Assembly (NCBI GenBank): GCA_976226885.1
Contig: OZ320313.1
Span: 116,126,001-116,190,000 of the forward strand
Source of the DNA: Iphione sp. A-MEVVRFRX5
Lineage: Eukaryota
Length of the DNA: 64,000 nucleotides
Direction of reading: 5' to 3'
The position numbers were made by a program, and so were the translations under genes. This document shows positions 37,204-46,812 of the stretch, piece after piece. The first letter of the stretch is position 1. Every line of letters starts with the position of its first letter. The notes under the pieces are model-generated. The model saw nothing but the letters and a program-made list of their open reading frames with translations, ran no database searches and was not told where the DNA came from.

Positions 37204-37477
37204 CTAAGTGGGATAGAGAAGAAAGGGCCAAGTTTACTTAAAATGACAAAAGTCGACCGGAAACAGTGTGTGTAAATTAGAGCGTTCAGACCGTATCTCT
37301 GCATGACTGGAATACAAAGAACGAGCTATTTTTCTAAGGACAAAAGCTAAAGGTTCGTAATCAAAGAGTTCCTTTCCAGAATGCGGCCCGGATTGTCGAA
37401 CCAAGGAGAAGACATATTCCTTTGTAGTTTTATTGTTTATCACTGAATAAAAGTTAACGTTTCCATTTCTCATTTCT

Positions 37478-37632
37478 NNNNNNNNNNNNNNNNNNNNNNN
37501 NNNNNNNNNNNNNNNNNNNNNNNNNNNNNNNNNNNNNNNNNNNNNNNNNNNNNNNNNNNNNNNNNNNNNNNNNNNNNNNNNNNNNNNNNNNNNNNNNNNN
37601 NNNNNNNNNNNNNNNNNNNNNNNNNNNNNNNN
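37478..37632. other. Assembly gap (155 N)
   Basis: Run of N. Confidence 1.
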
Positions 37633-40481
37633 ATATTTAAAACAGAATTACAGACAAGTACATATAAAAAGCTAGTTCGCCCCTGATAGGCAAACGCACT
37701 TACTGAACAATGGCTACATTTTGTAAACACCATTGCATTGTAAATTCATTAGCAAAAACATGCCAAGTGCCTCCGCAGGGAAATTTGCAACGGAAAACAG
37801 GATGTCGTGCACAGAAATCAAATGCCTTTGAGTGCGGGCGTACATCATTACATATTGATATATTTGCCAGTCGTTCCCACAATAGAGTACACGTATACAG
37901 CGTGTGAGTAAAAAAAACATTGTTTTTTTCTTATATGTGCATACATTTTTAAAATATCGTTCTTTCGTCGCTGTTTTTAAAGCAATAGAACACTTTACTT
38001 TTACAAGAAAACGTGTGAAACTAGCAAATATACATCAGAGTAGCACTGCTACAAGAATCTAGTGAAGAAATATTCTAAAAAGAAAAATCAGTTAACTAGC
38101 GCGTCTCCTTTTTTTAAACGACAAAAGTGGTAAGAGCTAAGTCGTTCACTTTTGTACACCCAACGTCAGTGGATTGGACATTTAAAAAATCTTAGGCTAT
38201 TTAACACGCTACTTTCAGATCGCCTCTACGTGTGCCAACTCCTGAAAGGAGAGTACCACGCCATGTTAACACCTGTAAGATTTGACGGCATCGACCGGCG
38301 AGCCACGTCTTCCTGGCCTTCTGCAAGGCAAGTCCGTTAAAGTTGCAGTGAATCATTTTTATGTATCTTTTATTTAACATGAGAACATATACATATAAGT
38401 ACGTGTTACCCAGGCCTTCCATTTTTCCACATCAACAACCTTACCTAAAAAGAATCTATTTACAGAAAGTTGATACAGTGTTGACTATGATAATGAAGAT
38501 AAATAGAGAGTGAAAGTGGATTTGGTAGTCAATAATCATAAACTGCCCATACCATCTGTACAACCGCACAGAGCTTCTTGCTGATCATATCTACATGTAC
38601 ATGTATTTCAAGTTGCACAGAGTCGTTGCATATTGCGAGGATAAGTATCGATGTAGACAGCGTCTACAGTCACGTCCAGCTAACCGATGCCAATTCACAT
38701 TTTAGCATAATACATACGGATATCTTCTTTTTATCATAAGTTGTACTTATCTGAATGCCTGCTGGGCTATAGAAACCGGCCCTTAGATGGTTTTTCAATG
38801 CGTGCGTATTCATGCACTCCGGGAAACACATAACAACCCAGGATATGGACTGAATGTTTTTATTTTTTTTCTTTTTTGGCTATGGGTAACCATGAGATGC
38901 ATCCACAGAGACAACATCGCATAACCCACCACAATGGGTGGCAGTTATGAATGGAACTTTTGAGAGAATTCACAATCAAGGTAGCATCTGCAGGGTACAA
39001 ACAACACCAACCACGTTTTCGATTAATTTAGGATATGGATTGAACACTGGTGCCTTCCCATGGGTGCGCCATTCGAGTATACGTGTGCATATCCAAGAAA
39101 AACTATCCAGAATTGATGACTTATCCTAGACACACACATATAAACCCTGTGGATTCTCTACCAACCTGGGCATCGGGCGACCATCTGTGATCAATTGAGG
39201 TTATTCACTGTCCCACAGAATCAGAACAAAATAATACACCCGCCTGTGTGTGCCTAAAATACAGACATTGAAACCCTGCCTTACTTGGTAAGTTGACCCG
39301 GCTTTACACACACGCGACGTTTTTTTTCAATGTATGCACACACGCATACACATATTTAAGTGCATTGCGTAGTGACATCTGGTAGTATTATATTCTAATA
39401 ATGGGTCGTGCTCAGGACTATGGGTAACACGGATGATATTCAATCTGCGAAATACAGCGTGGCAGGCAGCGCTGCCGTGCGCCAAAGGGAAAGACTAGGA
39501 TGACGAGCGTCAAACAGCCCGATCTGGCGAGGGCGATGCCGAGGGGTCAATGGAATGGTTTGACAGGCAGCAACAAGGGCAGCGTTATGCCTATCAGACG
39601 GAGGGGAGGGGGCTTAATGTGAGGCATCTGGCAGCTGCGACGGCCCCAGGTGGAGGCCGTGCCAATCACAGCAGGTGTGAATCAGGTGTGAGCGGGCCCT
39701 AACGGTACAGCCGTCATGCGGCAGGAGGGGGGGGGGGCAGCGGTAGGCCGCTTGACCGGCCCCTCTTCATGTCAATATCTGTAGAGAGGAGGATGGTGGA
39801 CGTAAAGTGGCAGGGAGATGGCAGTGCCGGCCGCCAGCTGTCACGGCTGACTGATGCCTTGTCACCTTCATCAGGCTGGCTCCCACCATGCCACTTCCTT
39901 CGGGATCCTATCGATCCACGTCACTCGTCTACAACCAACAACTGTTCCCACATTCGCCTCCGCCATCTCCATCGCCTTAAATCTCGTTATGAGTAAACGC
40001 TGTCAGCTGATGGGTGATGGCTGAGTTGCTCAGCGGTCAAACGCGATGGTACCATAAGTCTGTCAAAAAGAGTGAATGAACACTGTCGTGCCTTCATTTT
40101 TTTCATACCTGGGCATCAATAAGACAACTCTAGCAACGACATATCGCTAACATAATGCGCTCGCAATATCACATCAGAAGAGCGTGTTTTAAAAATCTCC
40201 TGAAGATTTACTAAAAAGATGGAAGTTAAAGCATTTACGGATTCTATATAGAAAAGGGGTCTTATGACACTGCAAGCATACAATTACTAGCTTAACCTTA
40301 GGCTGTACTATGGGGATTCGCAATTGGCACCTGCAGTCTCCTGCCGTGGTTTTTGTAGAAAATAATGGCCTGCTTGTAGTGCCCTAATGACTGTCCAGCT
40401 CATGTCATTTGCGCATCAATCAACAGTGAGCTCTTCTTGTGGCTGAGCAGCTCGCAGAATGGACAGCGCGCGCGGTACCTA

Positions 40482-40718
40482 NNNNNNNNNNNNNNNNNNN
40501 NNNNNNNNNNNNNNNNNNNNNNNNNNNNNNNNNNNNNNNNNNNNNNNNNNNNNNNNNNNNNNNNNNNNNNNNNNNNNNNNNNNNNNNNNNNNNNNNNNNN
40601 NNNNNNNNNNNNNNNNNNNNNNNNNNNNNNNNNNNNNNNNNNNNNNNNNNNNNNNNNNNNNNNNNNNNNNNNNNNNNNNNNNNNNNNNNNNNNNNNNNNN
40701 NNNNNNNNNNNNNNNNNN
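40482..40718. other. Assembly gap (237 N)
   Basis: Run of N. Confidence 1.
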
Positions 40719-41129
40719 GAATGACGTGCAAATTGCAAGTAAGAGATTAAAGTGCATCAGCACGCGCCGGCATTTGGAATAAATCTGTATTTTTGTCAGA
40801 TTGGGCTGACGAAATATGGCCCAACTTAACAGTGGGCGCTTGTGACAGTGGATCCTGTTAGAAACAGAACGCCATAAAAAAAGGTGAGGTTCAATCTATA
40901 TGCTCGAAGTGGTGTTGGCCTCTGGTGGCCTTCAAAGGAACTACAAATAAATCACTGCCAAGACTCCGTAGTCCCACGAAGCACCATCCTATCTAATACC
41001 TGTTTCTCAAATCTCTCTGAATTACAACAGAAGTCAATTACCAATGCTTATATTCATTAATCTATCACATACTTTCACTCGAAGTATCACTAATCCGACT
41101 GTAAAAAACGGTGAAGCAGAAACAATATA

Positions 41130-41219
41130 CAGTGGAAAACCTCTATTTAGGACATGCTTGTGTTTCCCCAGAAAGGTCCCAAACTGAAACATGTCCTTAT
41201 TTAAGACGTCTTCCATACG
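41130..41219. mobile_element. Degenerate Tc1/mariner-pogo-type MITE
   Basis: TA-CAGTGGAAAACCTCTATTTAGGACATG ... CATGTCCTTATTTAAGACGTCTTCCATACG-TA; internal AGGACATG/CATGTCCT inversion; same terminal type as 34700-34829. Confidence 0.6.
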
Positions 41220-41229
41220 TAGCAAAACA

Positions 41230-41960
41230 CAATCTCGTCCTCGAAGAATTGCCAGTGCAAAGGACATCATCTTCATCATTACCAACCAACTTGATAAGAT
41301 GTCACTGTCTAGACCATATGGTGTAGTGTTACATAATGGGCTTTCGCCCTTTATGTACTTAGCACAGTCATTTGGATTGTTCTTCGGGATGTTCTTGTTG
41401 TCGGCAAAGTCAAATCGTTCGGTATCATAGTGTCCGTTAAACGTGCTGCATTGGACTTGACTGTATGCTGGGACATTGTCACCACTGTCCTTTATCGTTG
41501 AGATCGTGTTGTCTGTTGACACATTGGAATACGTTAGCTTGCGAGGAAAAGTCTTGTTAGTTCTGCGGGATGGGGCACGCAGGGGTGTTGGTGGTGGTGG
41601 GACAAGCTGCTTGGCGGTTGGTTGTGACGTCGCCTGTGTTGACCTGTTTTCTGTGGAAGTCGGTCGCATGGAGGTGGAGCTGTTGCTTATGCTGGGCAGG
41701 ATGTTGGAGGTATCCAGTTCCTCTGTGTTCCCACTGGTTGCTGAGTCAGACAACTGACCCATCAGGGTTAGAAGGTTGTTTGTTGCTTGCTCCTGTTCGT
41801 CATCTTCGTTGATGATGATCGGGTCGGTACTGTTTTTTGGTTGCTTGTTAGGGTGGGCAGGTTCGGAAGTACTGGCACCCATGCCGAGTTCTTGTCTTGT
41901 CATGGACTCTAATGGTTGTTTCCAAGGGGCAGGAATTGTAATTTGGCTTGGATGGAGCAT
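41230..41960 (-). pseudogene. Diverged, zinc-finger-less paralogue of the PLE accessory ORF (part of an older element)
   Basis: The first true ATG is at 41960 (ggcaacATG): MLHPSQITIPAPWKQPLE..IINEDDE..ATNNLLTLMGQLSDS..FPRKLTYS..YGLDSDILSSWLVMMKMMS aligns motif by motif with the 42420-43424 ORF. Interrupted at its 3' end by a MITE. Confidence 0.7.
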
Positions 41961-42019
41961 GTTGCCGTAGTTCAAATTACATGTCGATCCCAAATTTCAG
42001 TTTAAAACTGCTCTTATAT

Positions 42020-42383
42020 ATCAAGTGAAAGCAAAACCAAAACACAATTTCCAGAACTTCTTTGTATTCAGTAAACCAAATAGTCCAGTAGATCAAACTC
42101 AAGCTTTCGACAGTCAACCTGTCTTCATCAGGAGTACATGTGGTGTATTCAACATACCGCGAAAATCTGCCTTATATACTCATCGGTTGCTAAGGTATCC
42201 AAGGATAATTACAGTTCTGCAGTTAAGATTTTCCTTGAGTATGATTTGTCAATAAAAATTAATTATGGATAATTGTTAAACTGGGATCAAAAATGCAAGT
42301 GAAGTACTATGTGAAGGGGTAAATGTTACAACAGTCCAGTATCACAGATGATTATGTTGCCAAATGTCTCGAATAAAAAATTA
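42020..42383 (-). repeat. 3' pseudo-LTR (364 bp)
   Basis: Direct repeat of 46434-46797; I counted 3 substitutions by eye. Confidence 0.97.
42097..42135 (-). ncRNA. Minimal type I hammerhead ribozyme (PLE type), second copy
   Basis: Identical to 46511-46549. Confidence 0.88.
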
Positions 42384-42599
42384 CTTCAAAACAGCCCCCT
42401 GTGTTGTATATCTGTATATTCACCAGTTGACACCAAACTTTAATCGAAACATTATGAGGATGTCCCCAGCAAGATCCGGGGACATCATGCGCGTCATAAC
42501 CAACCACGAGTTAATCATATCTCTGGACAGTCCGTATAGAATGTCTTTCGGTGGTTTCGGACTAGGTCCCTTGGGTTTTACATAAGGCGGCAGACTGAC

Positions 42600-43424
42600 C
42601 TATTGGCTTTTGTCGGCAGTGGTTGGTTCGAATGTGGTAGTGTGAACGAAGTTAGCTGGTGTACTCGTATAATTACATGACTTACTGTGAGAGGGGGCTG
42701 TTGGATTACAACTATTAGTACTGTTGGTTATAGAGGAAATATCTGAATAAGTCAGTTTTCTTGGGAATCCCTTGGTTGACGGTAACGGAGGTGACCGTCC
42801 TGGTGTGCTTGGGGGTGGTAGCGGCGGTTCTGGTTGTTTGGCAATGATGTCGTTTGGGACTTCTGCTGGTTCACAACTGGGTCGGCTGGAGGTGGCGCTG
42901 GTTGAGACCGATGGTACGATGGTGCTGCTGTTATCCGTTGTTCCCGCCTCTGTGGTGTGGTTGGTGTTGGTTGACTCGGACAGTCTGCTCATCAGGGTTA
43001 CGAGGTTGTGGGTAGCAATTCGTTGCTCCTCGTCGTCGTCATCGATTATGACTGGTGCCGTTGATGTTGAAGCCTTTGGTTGCTTGCGGGCAGGGAGTCC
43101 GATTGAACTTCCACCTGCCTGCAGTTCGGTGTGTGTTGTTGCTTCTAACGGGTGTTTCCAGAGTTCAGGAACATGTATTTGACTTGGGTGTAGAGTGTTC
43201 ATGGTGTTATGGCAATTCTTCACATGGCGTAAGAGCGATGATCGGGTGCTGTATGATTTTTCACAAAACGGGCACTCGTGTCGTTTTTTGCTTGGGTCTT
43301 CATGTGCCATGGTTATATGTCGTTTTAGTGATTTGTAGCCCATAAAAGTCAAAGTACAGATGGTGCATTGGACGATGGGGCCAAAAGTCTTTTTCGGAAC
43401 AGTTTTGGCAGTGCTGATGTCCAT
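42600..43424 (-). CDS. Accessory ORF inside the PLE: two C2H2 zinc fingers plus Ser/Thr/Pro-rich region; homology continues past the TAG to 42420
   Basis: ATG 43 nt after the EN stop and preceded by an in-frame TGA. CTIC-x12-H-x4-H and CPFC-x12-H-x4-H fingers. Downstream motifs are shared with the paralogue at 41230-41960. Confidence 0.8.
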   Translation of the reverse strand: MDISTAKTVPKKTFGPIVQCTICTLTFMGYKSLKRHITMAHEDPSKKRHECPFCEKSYSTRSSLLRHVKNCHNTMNTLHPSQIHVPELWKHPLEATTHTELQAGGSSIGLPARKQPKASTSTAPVIIDDDDEEQRIATHNLVTLMSRLSESTNTNHTTEAGTTDNSSTIVPSVSTSATSSRPSCEPAEVPNDIIAKQPEPPLPPPSTPGRSPPLPSTKGFPRKLTYSDISSITNSTNSCNPTAPSHSKSCNYTSTPANFVHTTTFEPTTADKSQ

Positions 43425-43467
43425 AATATTTCAATTAGATTCTTGCCAGCGTGTACGTGCGTGTGGT

Positions 43468-44067
43468 TCACTCGCGTATGTTGAGGCCTAGTGGGCGGTA
43501 CATTCGTAAGATGCTGATCCATGCCTCCTCCAATCGGAGGCGTTGGTTGAGGTCACATGCTGTTGTATCCAAATGTTGGATTGTGACGTCATTTGATTGA
43601 CATGTGGCGTTGAAATGCAGGGCGACTGGTTTCAACTCACGTAAGTTGGCGATGTCATTCAGATGTTGAGTGAGTCGGCGGTGGATGGAGTTGCTAGTTT
43701 GGCCTACATACATTTTATTGCATCTTTTACAATGTATGCAGTACACAACATCACATGTTTGGCAGGTAGCATATCCGACCGTTCGGATTTTGCGGGAGTT
43801 CGTTGACGATGTGACATAGGAGGTTTGGATTATGCGCGGGCAAGTGCGACATCGTGGTTTGTTGCATGGGTGCGTGCCATTTTTGCTCTCTGGTCTTGGG
43901 TGTTCTGCTTGTGTCAGAATTTCTCTTAGGTTCTTCCCCCGTTTGTGTGCTTGGATGATTTTGTGTTGGAGGAATTCATCATTGCCGTGTGATTGTTGCA
44001 GGATGTCATGGGCATGTTTGAGTGCGAGTGAAAATTCCTGTTGTGAGGGTTGGTGGTATGTTTTCAC
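43468..44067 (-). CDS. PLE GIY-YIG endonuclease with Cys-rich linker
   Basis: The frame extends upstream as KVIPYVKTYH (the IPFVxTYHP-type motif). Contains CNKPRCRTC, VVYCIHCKRCNKMYVGQT, RRLTQH, ALHF, RLEEAWI and GLN; the catalytic R/E/N positions appear intact. Confidence 0.93.
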   Translation of the reverse strand: MKTYHQPSQQEFSLALKHAHDILQQSHGNDEFLQHKIIQAHKRGKNLREILTQAEHPRPESKNGTHPCNKPRCRTCPRIIQTSYVTSSTNSRKIRTVGYATCQTCDVVYCIHCKRCNKMYVGQTSNSIHRRLTQHLNDIANLRELKPVALHFNATCQSNDVTIQHLDTTACDLNQRLRLEEAWISILRMYRPLGLNIRE

Positions 44068-44075
44068 GTACGGGA

Positions 44076-45830
44076 TTACTTTTGATGTTTGGTTTGGTTT
44101 GTTGCCAGGAGGGCTTGTCTGTTCGTGTGGCGTACTTGTCGGAGTGTTTTCAGGAGTAGCTTTTTGGGATAACCTCTTGTGACGAAGTATTGGATCATGT
44201 TTGTGGCATGTTGTTCGAATTGTTGGATTTCAGTGCAGATGGAGCGGATGCGAAGTAGTTGGCTGTATGGTATGGAAGTTTTTTGGTGTGTTGGGTGGTA
44301 GCTGGTGTAGTGTAGGTAGATGTGGGCATCAGTGGGCTTAGTGTACAAAGTGGTTGCCAGTTTGCCTTTGTGTTTGTATACTGTGGTGTCGAGGAATGTG
44401 ATTTCCTGCTGGCAGTATTCATGCGTGAACTTGATTGTGTTGTGTTGAGTGTTCAGGTAATTTAGGAATGTTAGTAGGGCTGCTTCCGGACCTCTATATA
44501 CCATGAAGATGTCGTCAATGTATCTTAGCCATACCAGGGGTTGTGTTGGTGCGTTTTGTAGTAGCTTGTCTTCCAGTTGTCCCATGAAGAGGTTGGTGTA
44601 GTTTGGTGCCATTTTGGTTCCCATTGCTGTGCCTTGCTTTTGGTGGTAGTATTGTTTGTTGAACTTAAAGGTGTTGCAAGTGAGGATGAAGTGTATTAGT
44701 CGTAGGATCAACCAGGTGTGTGGAGTGTCTTGGGTTCTCGTCATCAGGTAGCTACGTGCGGCGATTATGCCGTCTTTGTGCGGGATGTTCGTGTAGAGAG
44801 ATGACACGTCCACAGTCAAGAGATAGTCATTGGCTTCAATGTCGATTTTCTGTATTTGGGTTATGAAGTCCTTTGTATCCTTTATGTAGCTGGGAAGGGT
44901 TTTCACGAAGGGAACCAGTAGTCGGTCTACGTAGGCTGATATTTTTTTGGTAGGTGAGTTGCATGCTGCTACAATTGGTCTGCCCGGGTTGTTTGGTTTG
45001 TGTATTTTGCTGAGGAAGTAGATGTTCGGTGTGTTGTAGTTTTTCACAATAAGGCATCTTGCTTCTGTTGGTAGGAAACCTGAGGATATACACTCGGACA
45101 CAAATTTCTTTATTGCATCGTTGTAGGTTGCTGTGGGGTCCGAGGGGAGTGATTCATAGTGATCGGGTTGTGACAGTTGGCGGGATGCTTCTGCTTCGTA
45201 ATCAGTGGTGTTTTGGATTACTACCGCTCCTCCCTTGTCTGCTGATTTTATTACTATATCTGGGTTGTTTGCCAGGGACTTCAGAGCAATTAATTCTTCT
45301 TTGGTGATGTTTGATTTGGGTCTGTGTAGGGTTGTTTGTTGGATGTGCTTCTCTAAGGTAGTTAGGTAGCAGTCAATGTATTTGTCTTTCCCAGGTTGTG
45401 GTGTCCAGCCACTTGAGCCTTCTAGACCCCAGAGGGGTGAGTTATGTTGGGGTTTGTCTGTGTCTTGAAATAAGTGTTGTAGTCTGATTCTGCGTGCGAA
45501 CAGGTAGAAGTCTTTGAGTTCATGTACTGGATGTGGTGTGTGTATGGATGGTATGAATGAAATTCCTTTATTCAGAATTGATTTTTCAGCATCAGTGGGG
45601 GTGTGTTGGGAGAGGTTCACGACTATTGTTGGTTTGGTGCTGGCCGGTTTGAGTTTGATGAAGCGGCGATTTTTCTTGTGCGTCTGTTCTCCAGGTCTTG
45701 TTGGAGTGCGGTTTCGTGCTGTTCCAGTAGTTCCAGGATTCTCTTGGTTTCTTGTTCTCCGATCCGTGTTTTGGAGTCGTCTATTATGGTCTGGCATTCT
45801 GTTTCCAAGATGCTTGTTCTGTCTTCCCAA
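44076..45830 (-). CDS. PLE reverse transcriptase (with thumb)
   Basis: VVNLS..KGISFIP; IKSADKGGAVVI; TVDVSSLYTNIPH (motif A); QKQGTAMGTKMAPNYTNLFM (motif B); WLRYIDDIF (motif C); FLD; LYTKPTD..YLHYTSYHP. The listed start is a TTG, and real homology begins near 45650. Confidence 0.95.
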   Translation of the reverse strand: MGRQNKHLGNRMPDHNRRLQNTDRRTRNQENPGTTGTARNRTPTRPGEQTHKKNRRFIKLKPASTKPTIVVNLSQHTPTDAEKSILNKGISFIPSIHTPHPVHELKDFYLFARRIRLQHLFQDTDKPQHNSPLWGLEGSSGWTPQPGKDKYIDCYLTTLEKHIQQTTLHRPKSNITKEELIALKSLANNPDIVIKSADKGGAVVIQNTTDYEAEASRQLSQPDHYESLPSDPTATYNDAIKKFVSECISSGFLPTEARCLIVKNYNTPNIYFLSKIHKPNNPGRPIVAACNSPTKKISAYVDRLLVPFVKTLPSYIKDTKDFITQIQKIDIEANDYLLTVDVSSLYTNIPHKDGIIAARSYLMTRTQDTPHTWLILRLIHFILTCNTFKFNKQYYHQKQGTAMGTKMAPNYTNLFMGQLEDKLLQNAPTQPLVWLRYIDDIFMVYRGPEAALLTFLNYLNTQHNTIKFTHEYCQQEITFLDTTVYKHKGKLATTLYTKPTDAHIYLHYTSYHPTHQKTSIPYSQLLRIRSICTEIQQFEQHATNMIQYFVTRGYPKKLLLKTLRQVRHTNRQALLATNQTKHQK

Positions 45831-46252
45831 TATTCTTGCAATAGTCTGGTTAGTTTGGAACCGAGTTCAGTTAGCGCAGTTTCCCATCTCATCTGGAACC
45901 TCGTCGAGATTTCTGGTATTTGCGGGGATATTGTTGGTTGTAGCCCTTTCGGAACGGTGTTGTTGGTTAGATGTGTACACATAAAAGTGTTGTGGTGTTT
46001 GGCAGTTACGATTCCTTTTTGGACCTTTTTCAATGTTTTGAATATAACAAGTGCTTCATTATGGAGGCCTCGTGCCGTGTTTTCACTTGGCGGCTGTTCG
46101 GGGTCGTTTGGCGACTCAGGCGGTGTTGGTTGGGCGCCTGATGACGTAGTAGCGATTGTGTTTGTCGTTGTTTGGGAACCGTTGTCGGCGACGTCTAGTT
46201 CTTCGTTGGTGTCGGTCCTTGGTCGTTTGGAATTTGGTTTATTAGTGTTCAT
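45623..46252 (-). CDS. PLE polyprotein N-terminal segment (frameshifted from RT)
   Basis: ATG-initiated 209-aa ORF with HHNTFMCTHLTNNTVPKGL and LENRRTRKI, resembling the conserved N-terminal region of PLE ORFs. Overlaps the RT frame by a -1 shift. Confidence 0.75.
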   Translation of the reverse strand: MNTNKPNSKRPRTDTNEELDVADNGSQTTTNTIATTSSGAQPTPPESPNDPEQPPSENTARGLHNEALVIFKTLKKVQKGIVTAKHHNTFMCTHLTNNTVPKGLQPTISPQIPEISTRFQMRWETALTELGSKLTRLLQEYWEDRTSILETECQTIIDDSKTRIGEQETKRILELLEQHETALQQDLENRRTRKIAASSNSNRPAPNQQ

Positions 46253-46510
46253 TGTGATTGTGCCCTGTGGGGTGGTTGCTCAGACCTTGGGGCAGTGGAT
46301 CCAGGGGATGCTCGCGGGTGACTGGCACGTTAGTGTGTTTTTATGCTGTTGTTCGGCCGCTGCACACTGCCGGGTTTTGGGCTGTTCGGGAAATAGTGGA
46401 TCCAGGGGATGCGTTTGGTTTTCGGTGGTCAAAATCAAGTGAAAGCAAAACCAAAACACAATTTCCAGAACTTCTTTGTATTCAGTAAACCAAATAGTCC
46501 AGTAGATCAA

Positions 46511-46549
46511 ACTCAAGCTTTCGACAGTCAACCTGTCTTCATCAGGAGT
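46511..46549 (-). ncRNA. Minimal type I hammerhead ribozyme (PLE type)
   Basis: ACUC CUGAUGA A GACAG GUUGA CUGUC GAAA GC UU GAGU: stem I ACUC/GAGU, stem II GACAG/CUGUC, palindromic helix III AAGCUU. Confidence 0.88.
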
Positions 46550-46585
46550 ACATGTGGTGTGTTCAACATACCGCGAAAATCTGCC

Positions 46586-46592
46586 TTATATA
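46586..46592 (-). promoter_or_regulatory. Candidate TATA box of the 5' pseudo-LTR
   Basis: AGTATATAAGGCAG about 37 nt upstream of the hammerhead. The same spacing is seen at 42172-42178 and, in the other family, at 47073-47080. Confidence 0.4.
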
Positions 46593-46812
46593 CTCATCGG
46601 TTGCTAAGGTATCCAAGGATAATTACAGTTCTGCAGTTAAGATGTTCCTTGAGTATGATTTGTCAATAAAAATTAATTATGGATAATTGTTAAACTGGGA
46701 TCAAAAATGCAAGTGAAGTACTATGTGAAGGGGTAAATGTTACAACAGTCCAGTATCACAGATGATTATGTTGCCAAATGTCTTGAATAAAAAATTATAT
46801 TTTTCTTATATA

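What the first reader, a model, noticed from the sequence alone, without database searches (positions are those of the whole stretch)
42420..43424. Penelope-like element carrying an extra downstream gene (two C2H2 zinc fingers plus an unrecognised domain) inside its pseudo-LTRs
Seen: 43 nt after the GIY-YIG stop, and still inside the 3' pseudo-LTR boundary, lies an independent ATG-started ORF with two canonical C-x2-C-x12-H-x4-H fingers, a Ser/Thr/Pro-rich linker and conserved blocks (LHPSQI, WKxPLE, NLxTLM, FPRKLTYS, SWLVM). Established: EN-containing PLEs (Penelope/Poseidon, Neptune, Nematis) normally encode a single RT-EN ORF; multi-ORF PLEs are mainly Athena/Terminon types. Inference: this is a Neptune-like lineage with a dedicated accessory gene, for example a DNA-binding targeting factor, a transcription regulator of the pseudo-LTR or an anti-silencing factor. 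I do not know of a description of this arrangement.
Basis: partly seen in the sequence, partly recalled or inferred. Interest (0 to 1): 0.88.

Follow-up and report, generated by a model that had tools for sequence, protein, structure and literature searches.

The report
Penelope-like retroelement with extra zinc-finger gene
This jumping gene (a Penelope-like retroelement) carries, after its reverse transcriptase-endonuclease gene, a second conserved gene for a two-zinc-finger protein that is kept by natural selection in many copies and in related elements of other animals, a layout not described for this class.

Summary
On the minus strand lies a 4.4-kb Penelope-like element (PLE) between 364-bp pseudo-LTRs. 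Its gene order is ORF1, RT, GIY-YIG endonuclease, a 43-nt spacer, then an ATG-started gene with two C2H2 fingers (ORF3). In this copy ORF3 has an in-frame stop at codon 275, so the SWLVM block lies beyond it. Sibling copies read through to 334 aa.

ORF3 is not a one-off capture. In this 1.18-Gb genome it sits directly 3' of the endonuclease in 28 of 30 close loci and 13 of 20 distant ones. It is intact (317-372 aa) in 20 of 29. It is under purifying selection (dN/dS 0.07-0.18), as strong in the fingers and C-terminal helices as in the endonuclease.

The same layout occurs after PLE endonucleases in Argopecten, Ruditapes and two unnamed public assemblies.

The model shows two zinc fingers, one helix, a C-terminal helical hairpin and about 58% disorder.

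The papers I could search describe EN+ PLEs as single-ORF. I read ORF3 as an element-encoded nucleic-acid-binding cofactor. Its function, expression route and exact clade are untested.

This scan had already noted the same layout elsewhere in this genome.

The parts
46434..46797 (-). 5' pseudo-LTR. It is a copy of the last 364 nt of the element.
   Evidence: Direct repeat 99% identical to 42020-42383, spacing 4414 nt.
46519..46545 (-). Hammerhead-ribozyme core motif in the 5' pLTR.
   Evidence: CTGATGA, a 5-bp stem (GACAG/CTGTC) and GAAA. It is followed by the palindrome AGCT, and ACTC/GAGT flank it as a possible helix I (read). Rfam gives no hit.
45623..46252 (-). ORF1 (209 aa). It overlaps the RT ORF in the -1 frame.
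   Evidence: The same overlap is seen in all six copies analysed. No Pfam family.
44076..45830 (-). Reverse-transcriptase part of the RT-EN gene. In this copy it is cut off from EN.
   Evidence: Pfam RVT_1, E 3.8e-13. Intact relatives have one RT-EN ORF of 795-799 aa. Stops and a frame change occur at about 44068-44078.
43468..44067 (-). GIY-YIG endonuclease part, with a CX4CxxC linker and CCHH motif.
   Evidence: Pfam GIY-YIG, 27.2 bits, cut-off 22.6. The motifs CNKPRCRTC and VVY-CIHC-YVG are read from the translation.
43425..43467 (-). 43-nt spacer between the EN stop and the ORF3 ATG.
   Evidence: The spacer is 41-50 nt and variable in sequence in the other subfamilies. The ORF3 start reads ATGG in all twelve, mostly with A at -3.
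42600..43424 (-). ORF3, open part (274 codons plus an in-frame stop at 42600-42602).
43209..43373 (-). Two C2H2 zinc fingers of ORF3 (residues 18-72).
   Evidence: Pfam. The profile matches two-finger DNA-binding units of CTCF, TZAP, ADR1 and Tramtrack. AlphaFold2 gives beta-beta-alpha folds with pLDDT 84-87.
42420..42599 (-). Rest of ORF3 after the premature stop (59 codons plus the natural stop). It holds the conserved C-terminal helical hairpin (SWLVMTRMMS...LKFG).
   Evidence: The sibling L002 reads through to 334 aa.
42020..42383 (-). 3' pseudo-LTR and 3' end of the element. It starts 36 nt after the natural ORF3 stop.
   Evidence: Three independent insertions (window, L002, L003) lose similarity at about 42020-42022.
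42105..42131 (-). Hammerhead-ribozyme core motif in the 3' pLTR.
   Evidence: The same core lies about 1297 nt after the ORF3 ATG in 8 of 9 copies of the two nearest subfamilies.
41034..41993 (-). Neighbouring 5'-truncated ORF3 of another subfamily. It lacks the fingers and abuts the 3' end of the main element.
   Evidence: 46% identical to ORF3 residues 73-231 and 87% identical to the L011 subfamily.

Best explanation
ORF3 is a real, element-encoded accessory gene of a deep lineage of endonuclease-containing Penelope-like elements whose EN has the Neptune/Nematis-type motifs.

The full element reads: pLTR, ORF1 (about 210 aa), RT-EN (about 795 aa, overlapping ORF1 in the -1 frame), a short spacer, ORF3 (about 335 aa), then the 3' pLTR with a hammerhead core.

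Shown. ORF3 is inherited together with RT-EN. It is kept open and is under purifying selection. Its product has an N-terminal pair of C2H2 fingers with conserved base-contact positions, a short conserved (P)WK...E motif, one amphipathic helix, long Ser/Thr/Pro-rich disordered linkers and a conserved C-terminal helical hairpin.

Inferred.
- ORF3 is translated from its own conserved ATG, in a good Kozak context. Translation would come either by re-initiation or internal initiation on the full-length RNA, or from a shorter RNA.
- The protein joins the element's ribonucleoprotein.
- The finger pair would bind one conserved nucleic-acid target, either the element's own RNA or cDNA end or the target DNA.
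- The helices and short motifs would contact the RT-EN, itself or host factors, helping retrotransposition of the RNA that encodes it.

The window copy itself is dead.
For: Linkage.
- EN and RT lie directly upstream on the same strand in 28 of 30 loci.
- The same holds in 13 of 20 loci of much more distant ORF3 families, whose EN is only 49-57% identical.
- 28 of the 121 scored EN hits have a finger hit or 42 lying 100-300 nt downstream.

Intactness. 20 of 29 loci keep a 317-372-aa ORF with both fingers.

Selection.
- ORF3 dN/dS is 0.07-0.18 at dS 0.2-0.9, against 0.01-0.10 for EN.
- In the closer pairs (dS 0.2-1.9), the fingers and the PWK motif have dN 0-0.02 and the C-terminal hairpin dN 0.01-0.05. 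The disordered parts run at dN/dS of about 0.1-0.5.
- Divergence ranks agree between ORF3 and EN, which points to vertical co-inheritance.

Other organisms.
- A two-finger ORF follows the EN stop in L039 and L073 (Logan ERR14368249), and in L040 and L072 (ENA ERZ25767047).
- It also does so in Argopecten irradians (L042) and Ruditapes philippinarum (L043).
- hhalign gives 95% probability through the fingers and the PWKxPxE motif.
- A Pecten maximus protein is 52% identical to the Argopecten ORF3.

Structure. AlphaFold2 with 26 sequences gives confident fingers, a helix at 127-150 and a hairpin at 300-329.

Finger pair. It matches DNA-binding two-finger units (CTCF 1.4e-10, TZAP 4.9e-10, ADR1, Tramtrack). 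Contact positions are conserved across families: G, K/R, S/A, K/R in finger 1 and N/T/S, S/A, S/T, R in finger 2.

Separate start. The frame of ORF3 relative to EN differs between subfamilies, and the ATGG start is conserved.
Against: - No RNA or protein evidence: no RNA run was listed. Expression and its route are therefore inferred.
- No partner was found. The RT-EN with ORF3(120-335) co-fold gave no answer.
- The contact residues are mostly small or basic, which fits weak or non-specific binding, RNA binding or protein binding as well as DNA binding.
- ORF3 changes 7-8 times faster than EN at the protein level between subfamilies. This would also suit a factor in conflict with the host.
- Three related PLE loci (Ixodes, Ylistrum, Saccostrea) showed no such ORF.
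- I could not test whether all PLE clades of this genome carry it.
Confidence: 0.55

Rival explanations
1. ORF3 is a counter-defence or regulatory factor. It would be a two-finger protein that binds the element's own pLTR or host chromatin to drive transcription or block silencing. It would not be part of the reverse-transcription machinery.
For: - The finger pair resembles those of transcription factors.
- The disordered linkers evolve fast. ORF3 dN is 7-8 times that of EN between subfamilies, as expected in a host-element conflict.
- The short conserved motifs in disordered regions look like docking sites for host proteins.
Against: - The base-contact positions of the fingers are conserved across families whose pLTR sequences differ, which argues against each family binding its own promoter.
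- The folded parts are under purifying selection, with no sign of diversifying selection there.
- No repressor or activator domain was found.
Confidence: 0.2
2. ORF3 is passive cargo. It would be a host zinc-finger gene picked up once between the pLTRs and carried along, as PLEs in the rotifer Adineta vaga carry host genes.
For: PLEs are known to mobilise host genes framed by their terminal repeats (PMC3846280). A Pecten homologue is annotated as an ordinary host protein.
Against: - ORF3 is linked to RT-EN in families whose EN is only about 50% identical, and in other animals.
- dN/dS is about 0.1 within active lineages.
- It keeps a fixed position, a short spacer and a conserved start.
- No intron-bearing host paralogue was seen. 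The non-finger profile finds only PLE-linked proteins among 1.84 billion representatives.
Confidence: 0.04
3. ORF3 is not a separate gene. It would be a C-terminal extension of RT-EN reached by stop-codon read-through or frameshifting.
For: The spacer is short (2-75 nt). In some subfamilies the ORF3 frame is open upstream of its ATG and overlaps the EN end.
Against: - The frame of ORF3 relative to EN is 0, +1 or +2 in different subfamilies.
- The EN stop codon varies (TGA, TAG, TAA).
- The spacer sequence is not conserved.
- The ATGG start is conserved.
Confidence: 0.03

Closest known systems
Canonical EN+ Penelope-like elements of the Neptune and Nematis clades (Arkhipova 2006; Craig et al. 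2021, PMC8557442)
   Same: - RT followed by a C-terminal GIY-YIG EN with a CCHH motif and a CX2-5CxxC linker.
- Pseudo-LTRs made by a partial upstream copy.
- A hammerhead core in the terminal repeat.
- 5'-truncated and head-to-tail copies.
   Different: Those elements are described as having a single RT-EN ORF (abstract of PMC8557442). That paper holds no mention of ORF2, a second, additional or downstream ORF, or C2H2. Here a conserved ORF of about 335 aa with two C2H2 fingers follows the EN, and a separate ORF1 precedes the RT.
Athena elements and Terminons (EN-deficient, multi-ORF PLEs of rotifers)
   Same: PLE-type RT accompanied by additional ORFs. An ORF1 may be separated from the RT by a frameshift (Fig. 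1 legend of PMC8557442).
   Different: By my own knowledge they are telomere-associated, mostly lack EN, and their extra ORFs are of other kinds (coiled-coil ORF1, GDSL esterase and others). The element here is interstitial and EN+, has pLTRs, and its extra gene lies 3' of the EN.
Adineta vaga Penelope elements carrying host genes between terminal repeats (PMC3846280)
   Same: A non-RT gene lies between PLE terminal repeats.
   Different: There, intron-containing host genes are mobilised in trans, without lineage-wide conservation. Here the gene is intronless in this clade, linked in cis to RT-EN, conserved across families and species, and under purifying selection.
Accessory nucleic-acid-binding modules of non-LTR retrotransposons: LINE ORF1p, and the N-terminal C2H2 plus Myb of R2 (own knowledge)
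   Same: An element-encoded nucleic-acid-binding module that serves the RNP or target recognition. A bicistronic RNA with a short inter-ORF spacer, as in L1.
   Different: ORF1p lies 5' of the RT and has coiled-coil, RRM or CCHC domains. The R2 fingers are part of the RT protein itself. ORF3 is a separate 3' gene with two C2H2 fingers and is mostly disordered. No sequence relation was found.
Two-finger C2H2 DNA-binding units (Tramtrack, ADR1, TZAP Znf10-11, CTCF finger pairs)
   Same: The profile of the ORF3 finger pair aligns over both fingers with E of 1e-10 to 1e-5.
   Different: ORF3 has H-x4-H spacing and an 8-9-residue non-TGEKP linker. It has mostly small or basic contact residues. There is no similarity outside the fingers.

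Membership tests
Penelope-like element, EN+ (C-terminal GIY-YIG) | PLE-type reverse transcriptase | tested here: met
   Pfam RVT_1, E 3.8e-13. There are 3297 homologues at E<=1e-10. Of the best 120 listed, all carry PF28514 and PF26215, 118 carry RVT_1 and about half carry GIY-YIG. The DKG motif (SADKGGAVV) is read.
Penelope-like element, EN+ (C-terminal GIY-YIG) | GIY-YIG endonuclease C-terminal to the RT, with a CCHH motif whose two cysteines lie between GIY and YIG | tested here: met
   Pfam GIY-YIG, 27.2 bits, cut-off 22.6. VVY-CIHC-...-YVG and HRRLTQH are read. RT and EN form one ORF in intact relatives.
Penelope-like element, EN+ (C-terminal GIY-YIG) | Pseudo-LTRs (direct repeat formed by a partial upstream copy) | tested here: met
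   A 364-bp direct repeat, 99% identical, spacing 4414 nt. The 3' boundary is confirmed by three insertions.
Penelope-like element, EN+ (C-terminal GIY-YIG) | Hammerhead ribozyme in the terminal repeat | tested here: inconclusive
   The core CUGAUGA, 5-bp helix II and GAAA, plus the AGCU palindrome and ACUC/GAGU, are present in both pLTRs. No Rfam hammerhead match was found at E<=10. The strict core was not found in the more distant subfamilies.
Neptune / Nematis clades | Extra CX2-5CxxC zinc-finger-like motif in the RT-EN linker (PMC8557442) | tested here: met
   CNKPRCRTC lies upstream of the GIY motif (translation).
Neptune clade specifically | Placement with reference Neptune RTs in a phylogeny | not tested
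   No named reference sequences (Repbase) were available. The nearest outside RT-EN proteins are 53% identical and unnamed.
C2H2 zinc-finger proteins | C-x2-C-x12-H-x3-5-H motifs folding as beta-beta-alpha | tested here: met
   zf-C2H2_4 at 35.8 bits and zf-C2H2 at 31.2 bits are both above their cut-offs. All 26 family members match. The AlphaFold2 model gives strands 16-18 and 25-27 with helix 29-40 for finger 1, and helix 60-70 for finger 2.
Host gene transduced by a PLE (A. vaga type) | Gene framed by PLE repeats without linked RT-EN, found as a sporadic capture with a host paralogue | tested here: not met
   Linked to RT-EN in 28/30 and 13/20 loci and in other species. dN/dS is about 0.1.
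Athena / Terminon multi-ORF PLEs | EN-deficient and telomere-associated | tested here: not met
   An EN is present and the element is interstitial on a 179-Mb contig, at about 116 Mb.
LINE ORF1p-type chaperone | Encoded 5' of the RT, with a coiled-coil plus RRM/CTD or CCHC knuckles | tested here: not met
   ORF3 lies 3' of the EN. Pfam, the PDB profile search and the Atlas give only C2H2 matches.

The most novel reading that the evidence does not exclude
A large, old branch of endonuclease-containing Penelope-like elements, found in this animal, in bivalves and in other animals, is tricistronic. Its third gene would encode an essential two-zinc-finger cofactor that recognises a conserved nucleic-acid target, such as the element's own 3' end or hammerhead region, or the DNA target. 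On this reading the 'single-ORF' picture of EN+ PLEs is incomplete, and PLE retrotransposition uses a dedicated binding protein encoded 3' of the enzyme.
Probability: 0.4. Interest if true: 0.8.

Novelty: new variant of a known kind. Interest (0 to 1): 0.72.

Why it matters
PLEs are the least understood class of retrotransposons. They are the sister group of telomerase RTs, and their endonuclease-bearing members are treated as single-gene elements.

A conserved, selected third gene changes what must be explained about how they copy themselves. Open questions include who binds the RNA, who picks the target, and how a 3' cistron is translated in an animal cell.

It also gives a concrete, small protein to test. 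On the practical side, such ORFs are being annotated as host 'uncharacterized proteins' (for example in Pecten maximus). They inflate zinc-finger gene counts in PLE-rich invertebrate genomes.

Tried and rejected
- **Word-indexed search with full-length ORF3:** no hit.
- **ESM Atlas:** only generic C2H2 clusters, and nothing for residues 120-333.
- **Pfam and PDB profile searches:** nothing beyond the fingers.
- **RNA evidence:** no run was listed.
- **Complex prediction, RT-EN with ORF3 120-335:** no verdict, score 0.00. This is not evidence either way.
- **Metagenome scan with ORF3 motifs (after a refused first try):** five loci, all ordinary multi-finger proteins with no PLE beside them.
- **Rfam on the pLTR and on nine loci:** no hammerhead model match.
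- **Search for an in-phase slippery heptamer in the ORF1/RT overlap:** none conserved.
- **Fold search of the ORF3 model:** not run, because 58% of the model is below pLDDT 50.
- **More genomic copies:** So I could not test whether the PLE families nearest the tick query, or those with open frames of about 1000 aa, carry ORF3.
- **Host species:** not identified.
- **Masked stretches:** the N-runs at 37470-37733 and 40480-40720 were left untouched. The second would hold the expected hammerhead position of the neighbouring truncated copy.
- **Rejected readings:** chance ORF, single host-gene capture, and EN read-through extension.

Full report
**Anatomy.** The feature lies on the minus strand.
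- A direct repeat of 364 bp (42020-42383 and 46434-46797, 99% identical, spacing 4414 nt) frames the element.
- Between the repeats, in element orientation, come ORF1 (45623-46252, 209 aa, no Pfam family), an RT ORF (44076-45830, RVT_1) and a GIY-YIG ORF (43468-44067).
- A 43-nt spacer follows, then an ATG-started ORF (42600-43424) with two C2H2 fingers.
- The EN carries CNKPRCRTC ahead of the GIY motif and two cysteines between GIY and YIG. These are the linker and CCHH motifs that Craig et al. 2021 (PMC8557442) give for Neptune and Nematis.
- Each repeat holds a hammerhead core: CTGATGA, a 5-bp stem, GAAA, then the palindrome AGCT, with ACTC/GAGT as a possible helix I. From my own knowledge this is the minimal, dimer-type hammerhead reported for PLEs. 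Rfam did not score it.

**State of this copy.** In this copy an in-frame stop sits at codon 275 (42600-42602).
- The remaining 59 codons, with the SWLVM block, follow in the same frame.
- Two siblings whose ORF3 protein is 96% identical read on at that codon. One of them has a 334-aa ORF.
- RT and EN are also split by stops and a frame change here. Intact relatives have one RT-EN ORF of 795-799 aa.
- The three insertions of this subfamily lose similarity at about 42020. This fixes the 3' end of the element and places ORF3 inside it, 36 nt before the 3' repeat.

**Is ORF3 part of the element?** A six-frame search of the host genome (1.18 Gb) gave 137 scored matches out of 2603 first-look candidates.
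- In 28 of the 30 best loci, EN and RT lie directly upstream on the same strand, with a spacer of 41-50 nt in the twelve copies where it was measured.
- 20 of 29 loci keep a 317-372-aa ORF with both fingers.
- The loci fall into subfamilies whose EN is 80-90% identical at the protein level while ORF3 is only 37-68% identical. The order of relatedness is the same for both.
- A search with a foreign ORF3 (from L040) pulled out still more distant host families. In 13 of these 20 loci an EN only 49-57% identical to the window's clade lies directly upstream.
- By coordinates, 28 of the 121 EN hits have a finger hit or 42 lying 100-300 nt downstream, although only a small share of candidates was scored.

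**Selection.** Pairwise Nei-Gojobori estimates on intact natural copies were used.
- ORF3 gives dN/dS of 0.07-0.18 where dS is 0.2-0.9. For example, L014 against L016 gives 0.042/0.540 and L026 against L027 gives 0.045/0.255. EN in the same loci gives 0.01-0.10.
- By region, in the closer pairs (dS 0.2-1.9): the finger pair and the HPSQI/PWK..E block have dN 0-0.02, and the C-terminal hairpin dN 0.01-0.05. The disordered linkers run at dN/dS of about 0.1-0.5.
- Differences laid down after insertion would be neutral, so these values show selection on the active lineages.

**Other organisms.** The nearest outside RT-EN proteins are only 53% identical.
- A two-finger ORF follows the EN stop in six outside loci:
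  - L039, 337 aa, spacer 54 nt.
  - L073, same Logan run as L039, with the EN C-terminus just upstream.
  - L040, 393 aa, spacer 75 nt, missed by the gene caller.
  - L072, same ENA assembly as L040.
  - L042, Argopecten irradians, 219 aa, 2 nt after the stop.
  - L043, Ruditapes philippinarum, 197 aa, 2 nt after the stop.
- hhalign links the bivalve ORFs to the host clade with about 95% probability, through both fingers and the PWKxPxE motif.
- Loci from Ixodes, Ylistrum and Saccostrea showed none.
- A profile of the non-finger part found only four true clusters among 1.84 billion representatives. All are of the L039 or L040 type.
- The Argopecten ORF3 has a 52% identical homologue annotated as an uncharacterized protein of Pecten maximus.

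**The protein.** An alignment of 26 members has these invariant positions: the eight zinc ligands, Y57, L63, E93, L145 and D320.
- AlphaFold2 (mean pLDDT 56) is confident only for the two fingers, a helix at 127-150 and a helical hairpin at 300-329. About 58% of the model has pLDDT under 50 and looks disordered.
- The finger pair aligns as a unit with DNA-binding finger pairs of CTCF, TZAP, ADR1 and Tramtrack.
- The base-contact positions are conserved across the families. This suggests one shared target rather than family-specific ones.
- Nothing else matched in Pfam, the PDB or the Atlas.

**Expression (inferred).**
- The frame of ORF3 relative to EN differs between subfamilies, and the EN stop codon and spacer sequence vary.
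- The start, in contrast, is always ATGG, mostly with A at -3.
- This argues for a separate initiation, not read-through. The 2-nt stop-start distance in bivalves suggests coupling to termination. A shorter RNA is equally possible.
- No RNA run was listed.

**Literature.**
- Full-text searches found no paper describing a zinc-finger or any conserved ORF after the EN of EN+ PLEs.
- The main survey calls them single-ORF.
- Host genes carried between PLE repeats are known in Adineta vaga, but that is a different phenomenon.

**Earlier notes of this scan.** Other windows of this genome were noted with the same layout. Two follow-ups reached the same conclusion. They also mention a promoter-like spacer and an intron in their lineages. 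In the clade studied here ORF3 is continuous and the spacer is not conserved.

**Verdict.** ORF3 is a real and well-supported accessory gene of a PLE lineage. It is a new variant of a known kind of element. Its function is inferred, not shown.

Noticed in passing
window 45623-46252 and 44076-45830 (minus); L032-L037: ORF1 (about 210 aa) overlaps the RT-EN ORF by about 180-245 nt in the -1 frame in every copy looked at. RT-EN has its own conserved ATG. No in-phase X_XXY_YYZ heptamer is conserved in the overlap. The element thus looks tricistronic.
   Followed up: partly
window 42105-42131 and 46519-46545 (minus): Hammerhead core with a palindromic AGCT in place of helix III, which would make it a dimer-type minimal ribozyme. 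Rfam models do not detect it. The same core lies about 1297 nt after the ORF3 ATG in 8 of 9 copies of the two nearest subfamilies. The strict pattern was not found in the more distant ones.
   Followed up: partly
window 41034-41993 (minus): A 5'-truncated ORF3 of another subfamily starts just after the fingers and directly abuts the 3' end of the main element, head to tail. Its C-terminal motif is broken after SWLVMMKMMS.
   Followed up: partly
P0098 (ENA): A 1326-aa PLE RT-EN protein carrying an OTU cysteine-protease domain (PF02338). This is another accessory module in a PLE.
   Followed up: no
P0127, Pecten maximus LOC117321331: Annotated as an uncharacterized host protein. It is 52% identical over its full length to the ORF3 of the Argopecten PLE, so it is probably a PLE gene. 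Its genomic context could not be checked.
   Followed up: no
G000: There are thousands of PLE endonuclease candidates (4139 at first look) in this genome. Some families have open frames of about 1000 aa, and others, nearest to tick PLEs, of about 840-870 aa. Whether these carry ORF3 is unknown.
   Followed up: no
window 37470-37733 and 40480-40720: Runs of N (masked or gaps). They were left untouched. The second covers where the neighbouring truncated copy would have its hammerhead.
   Followed up: no
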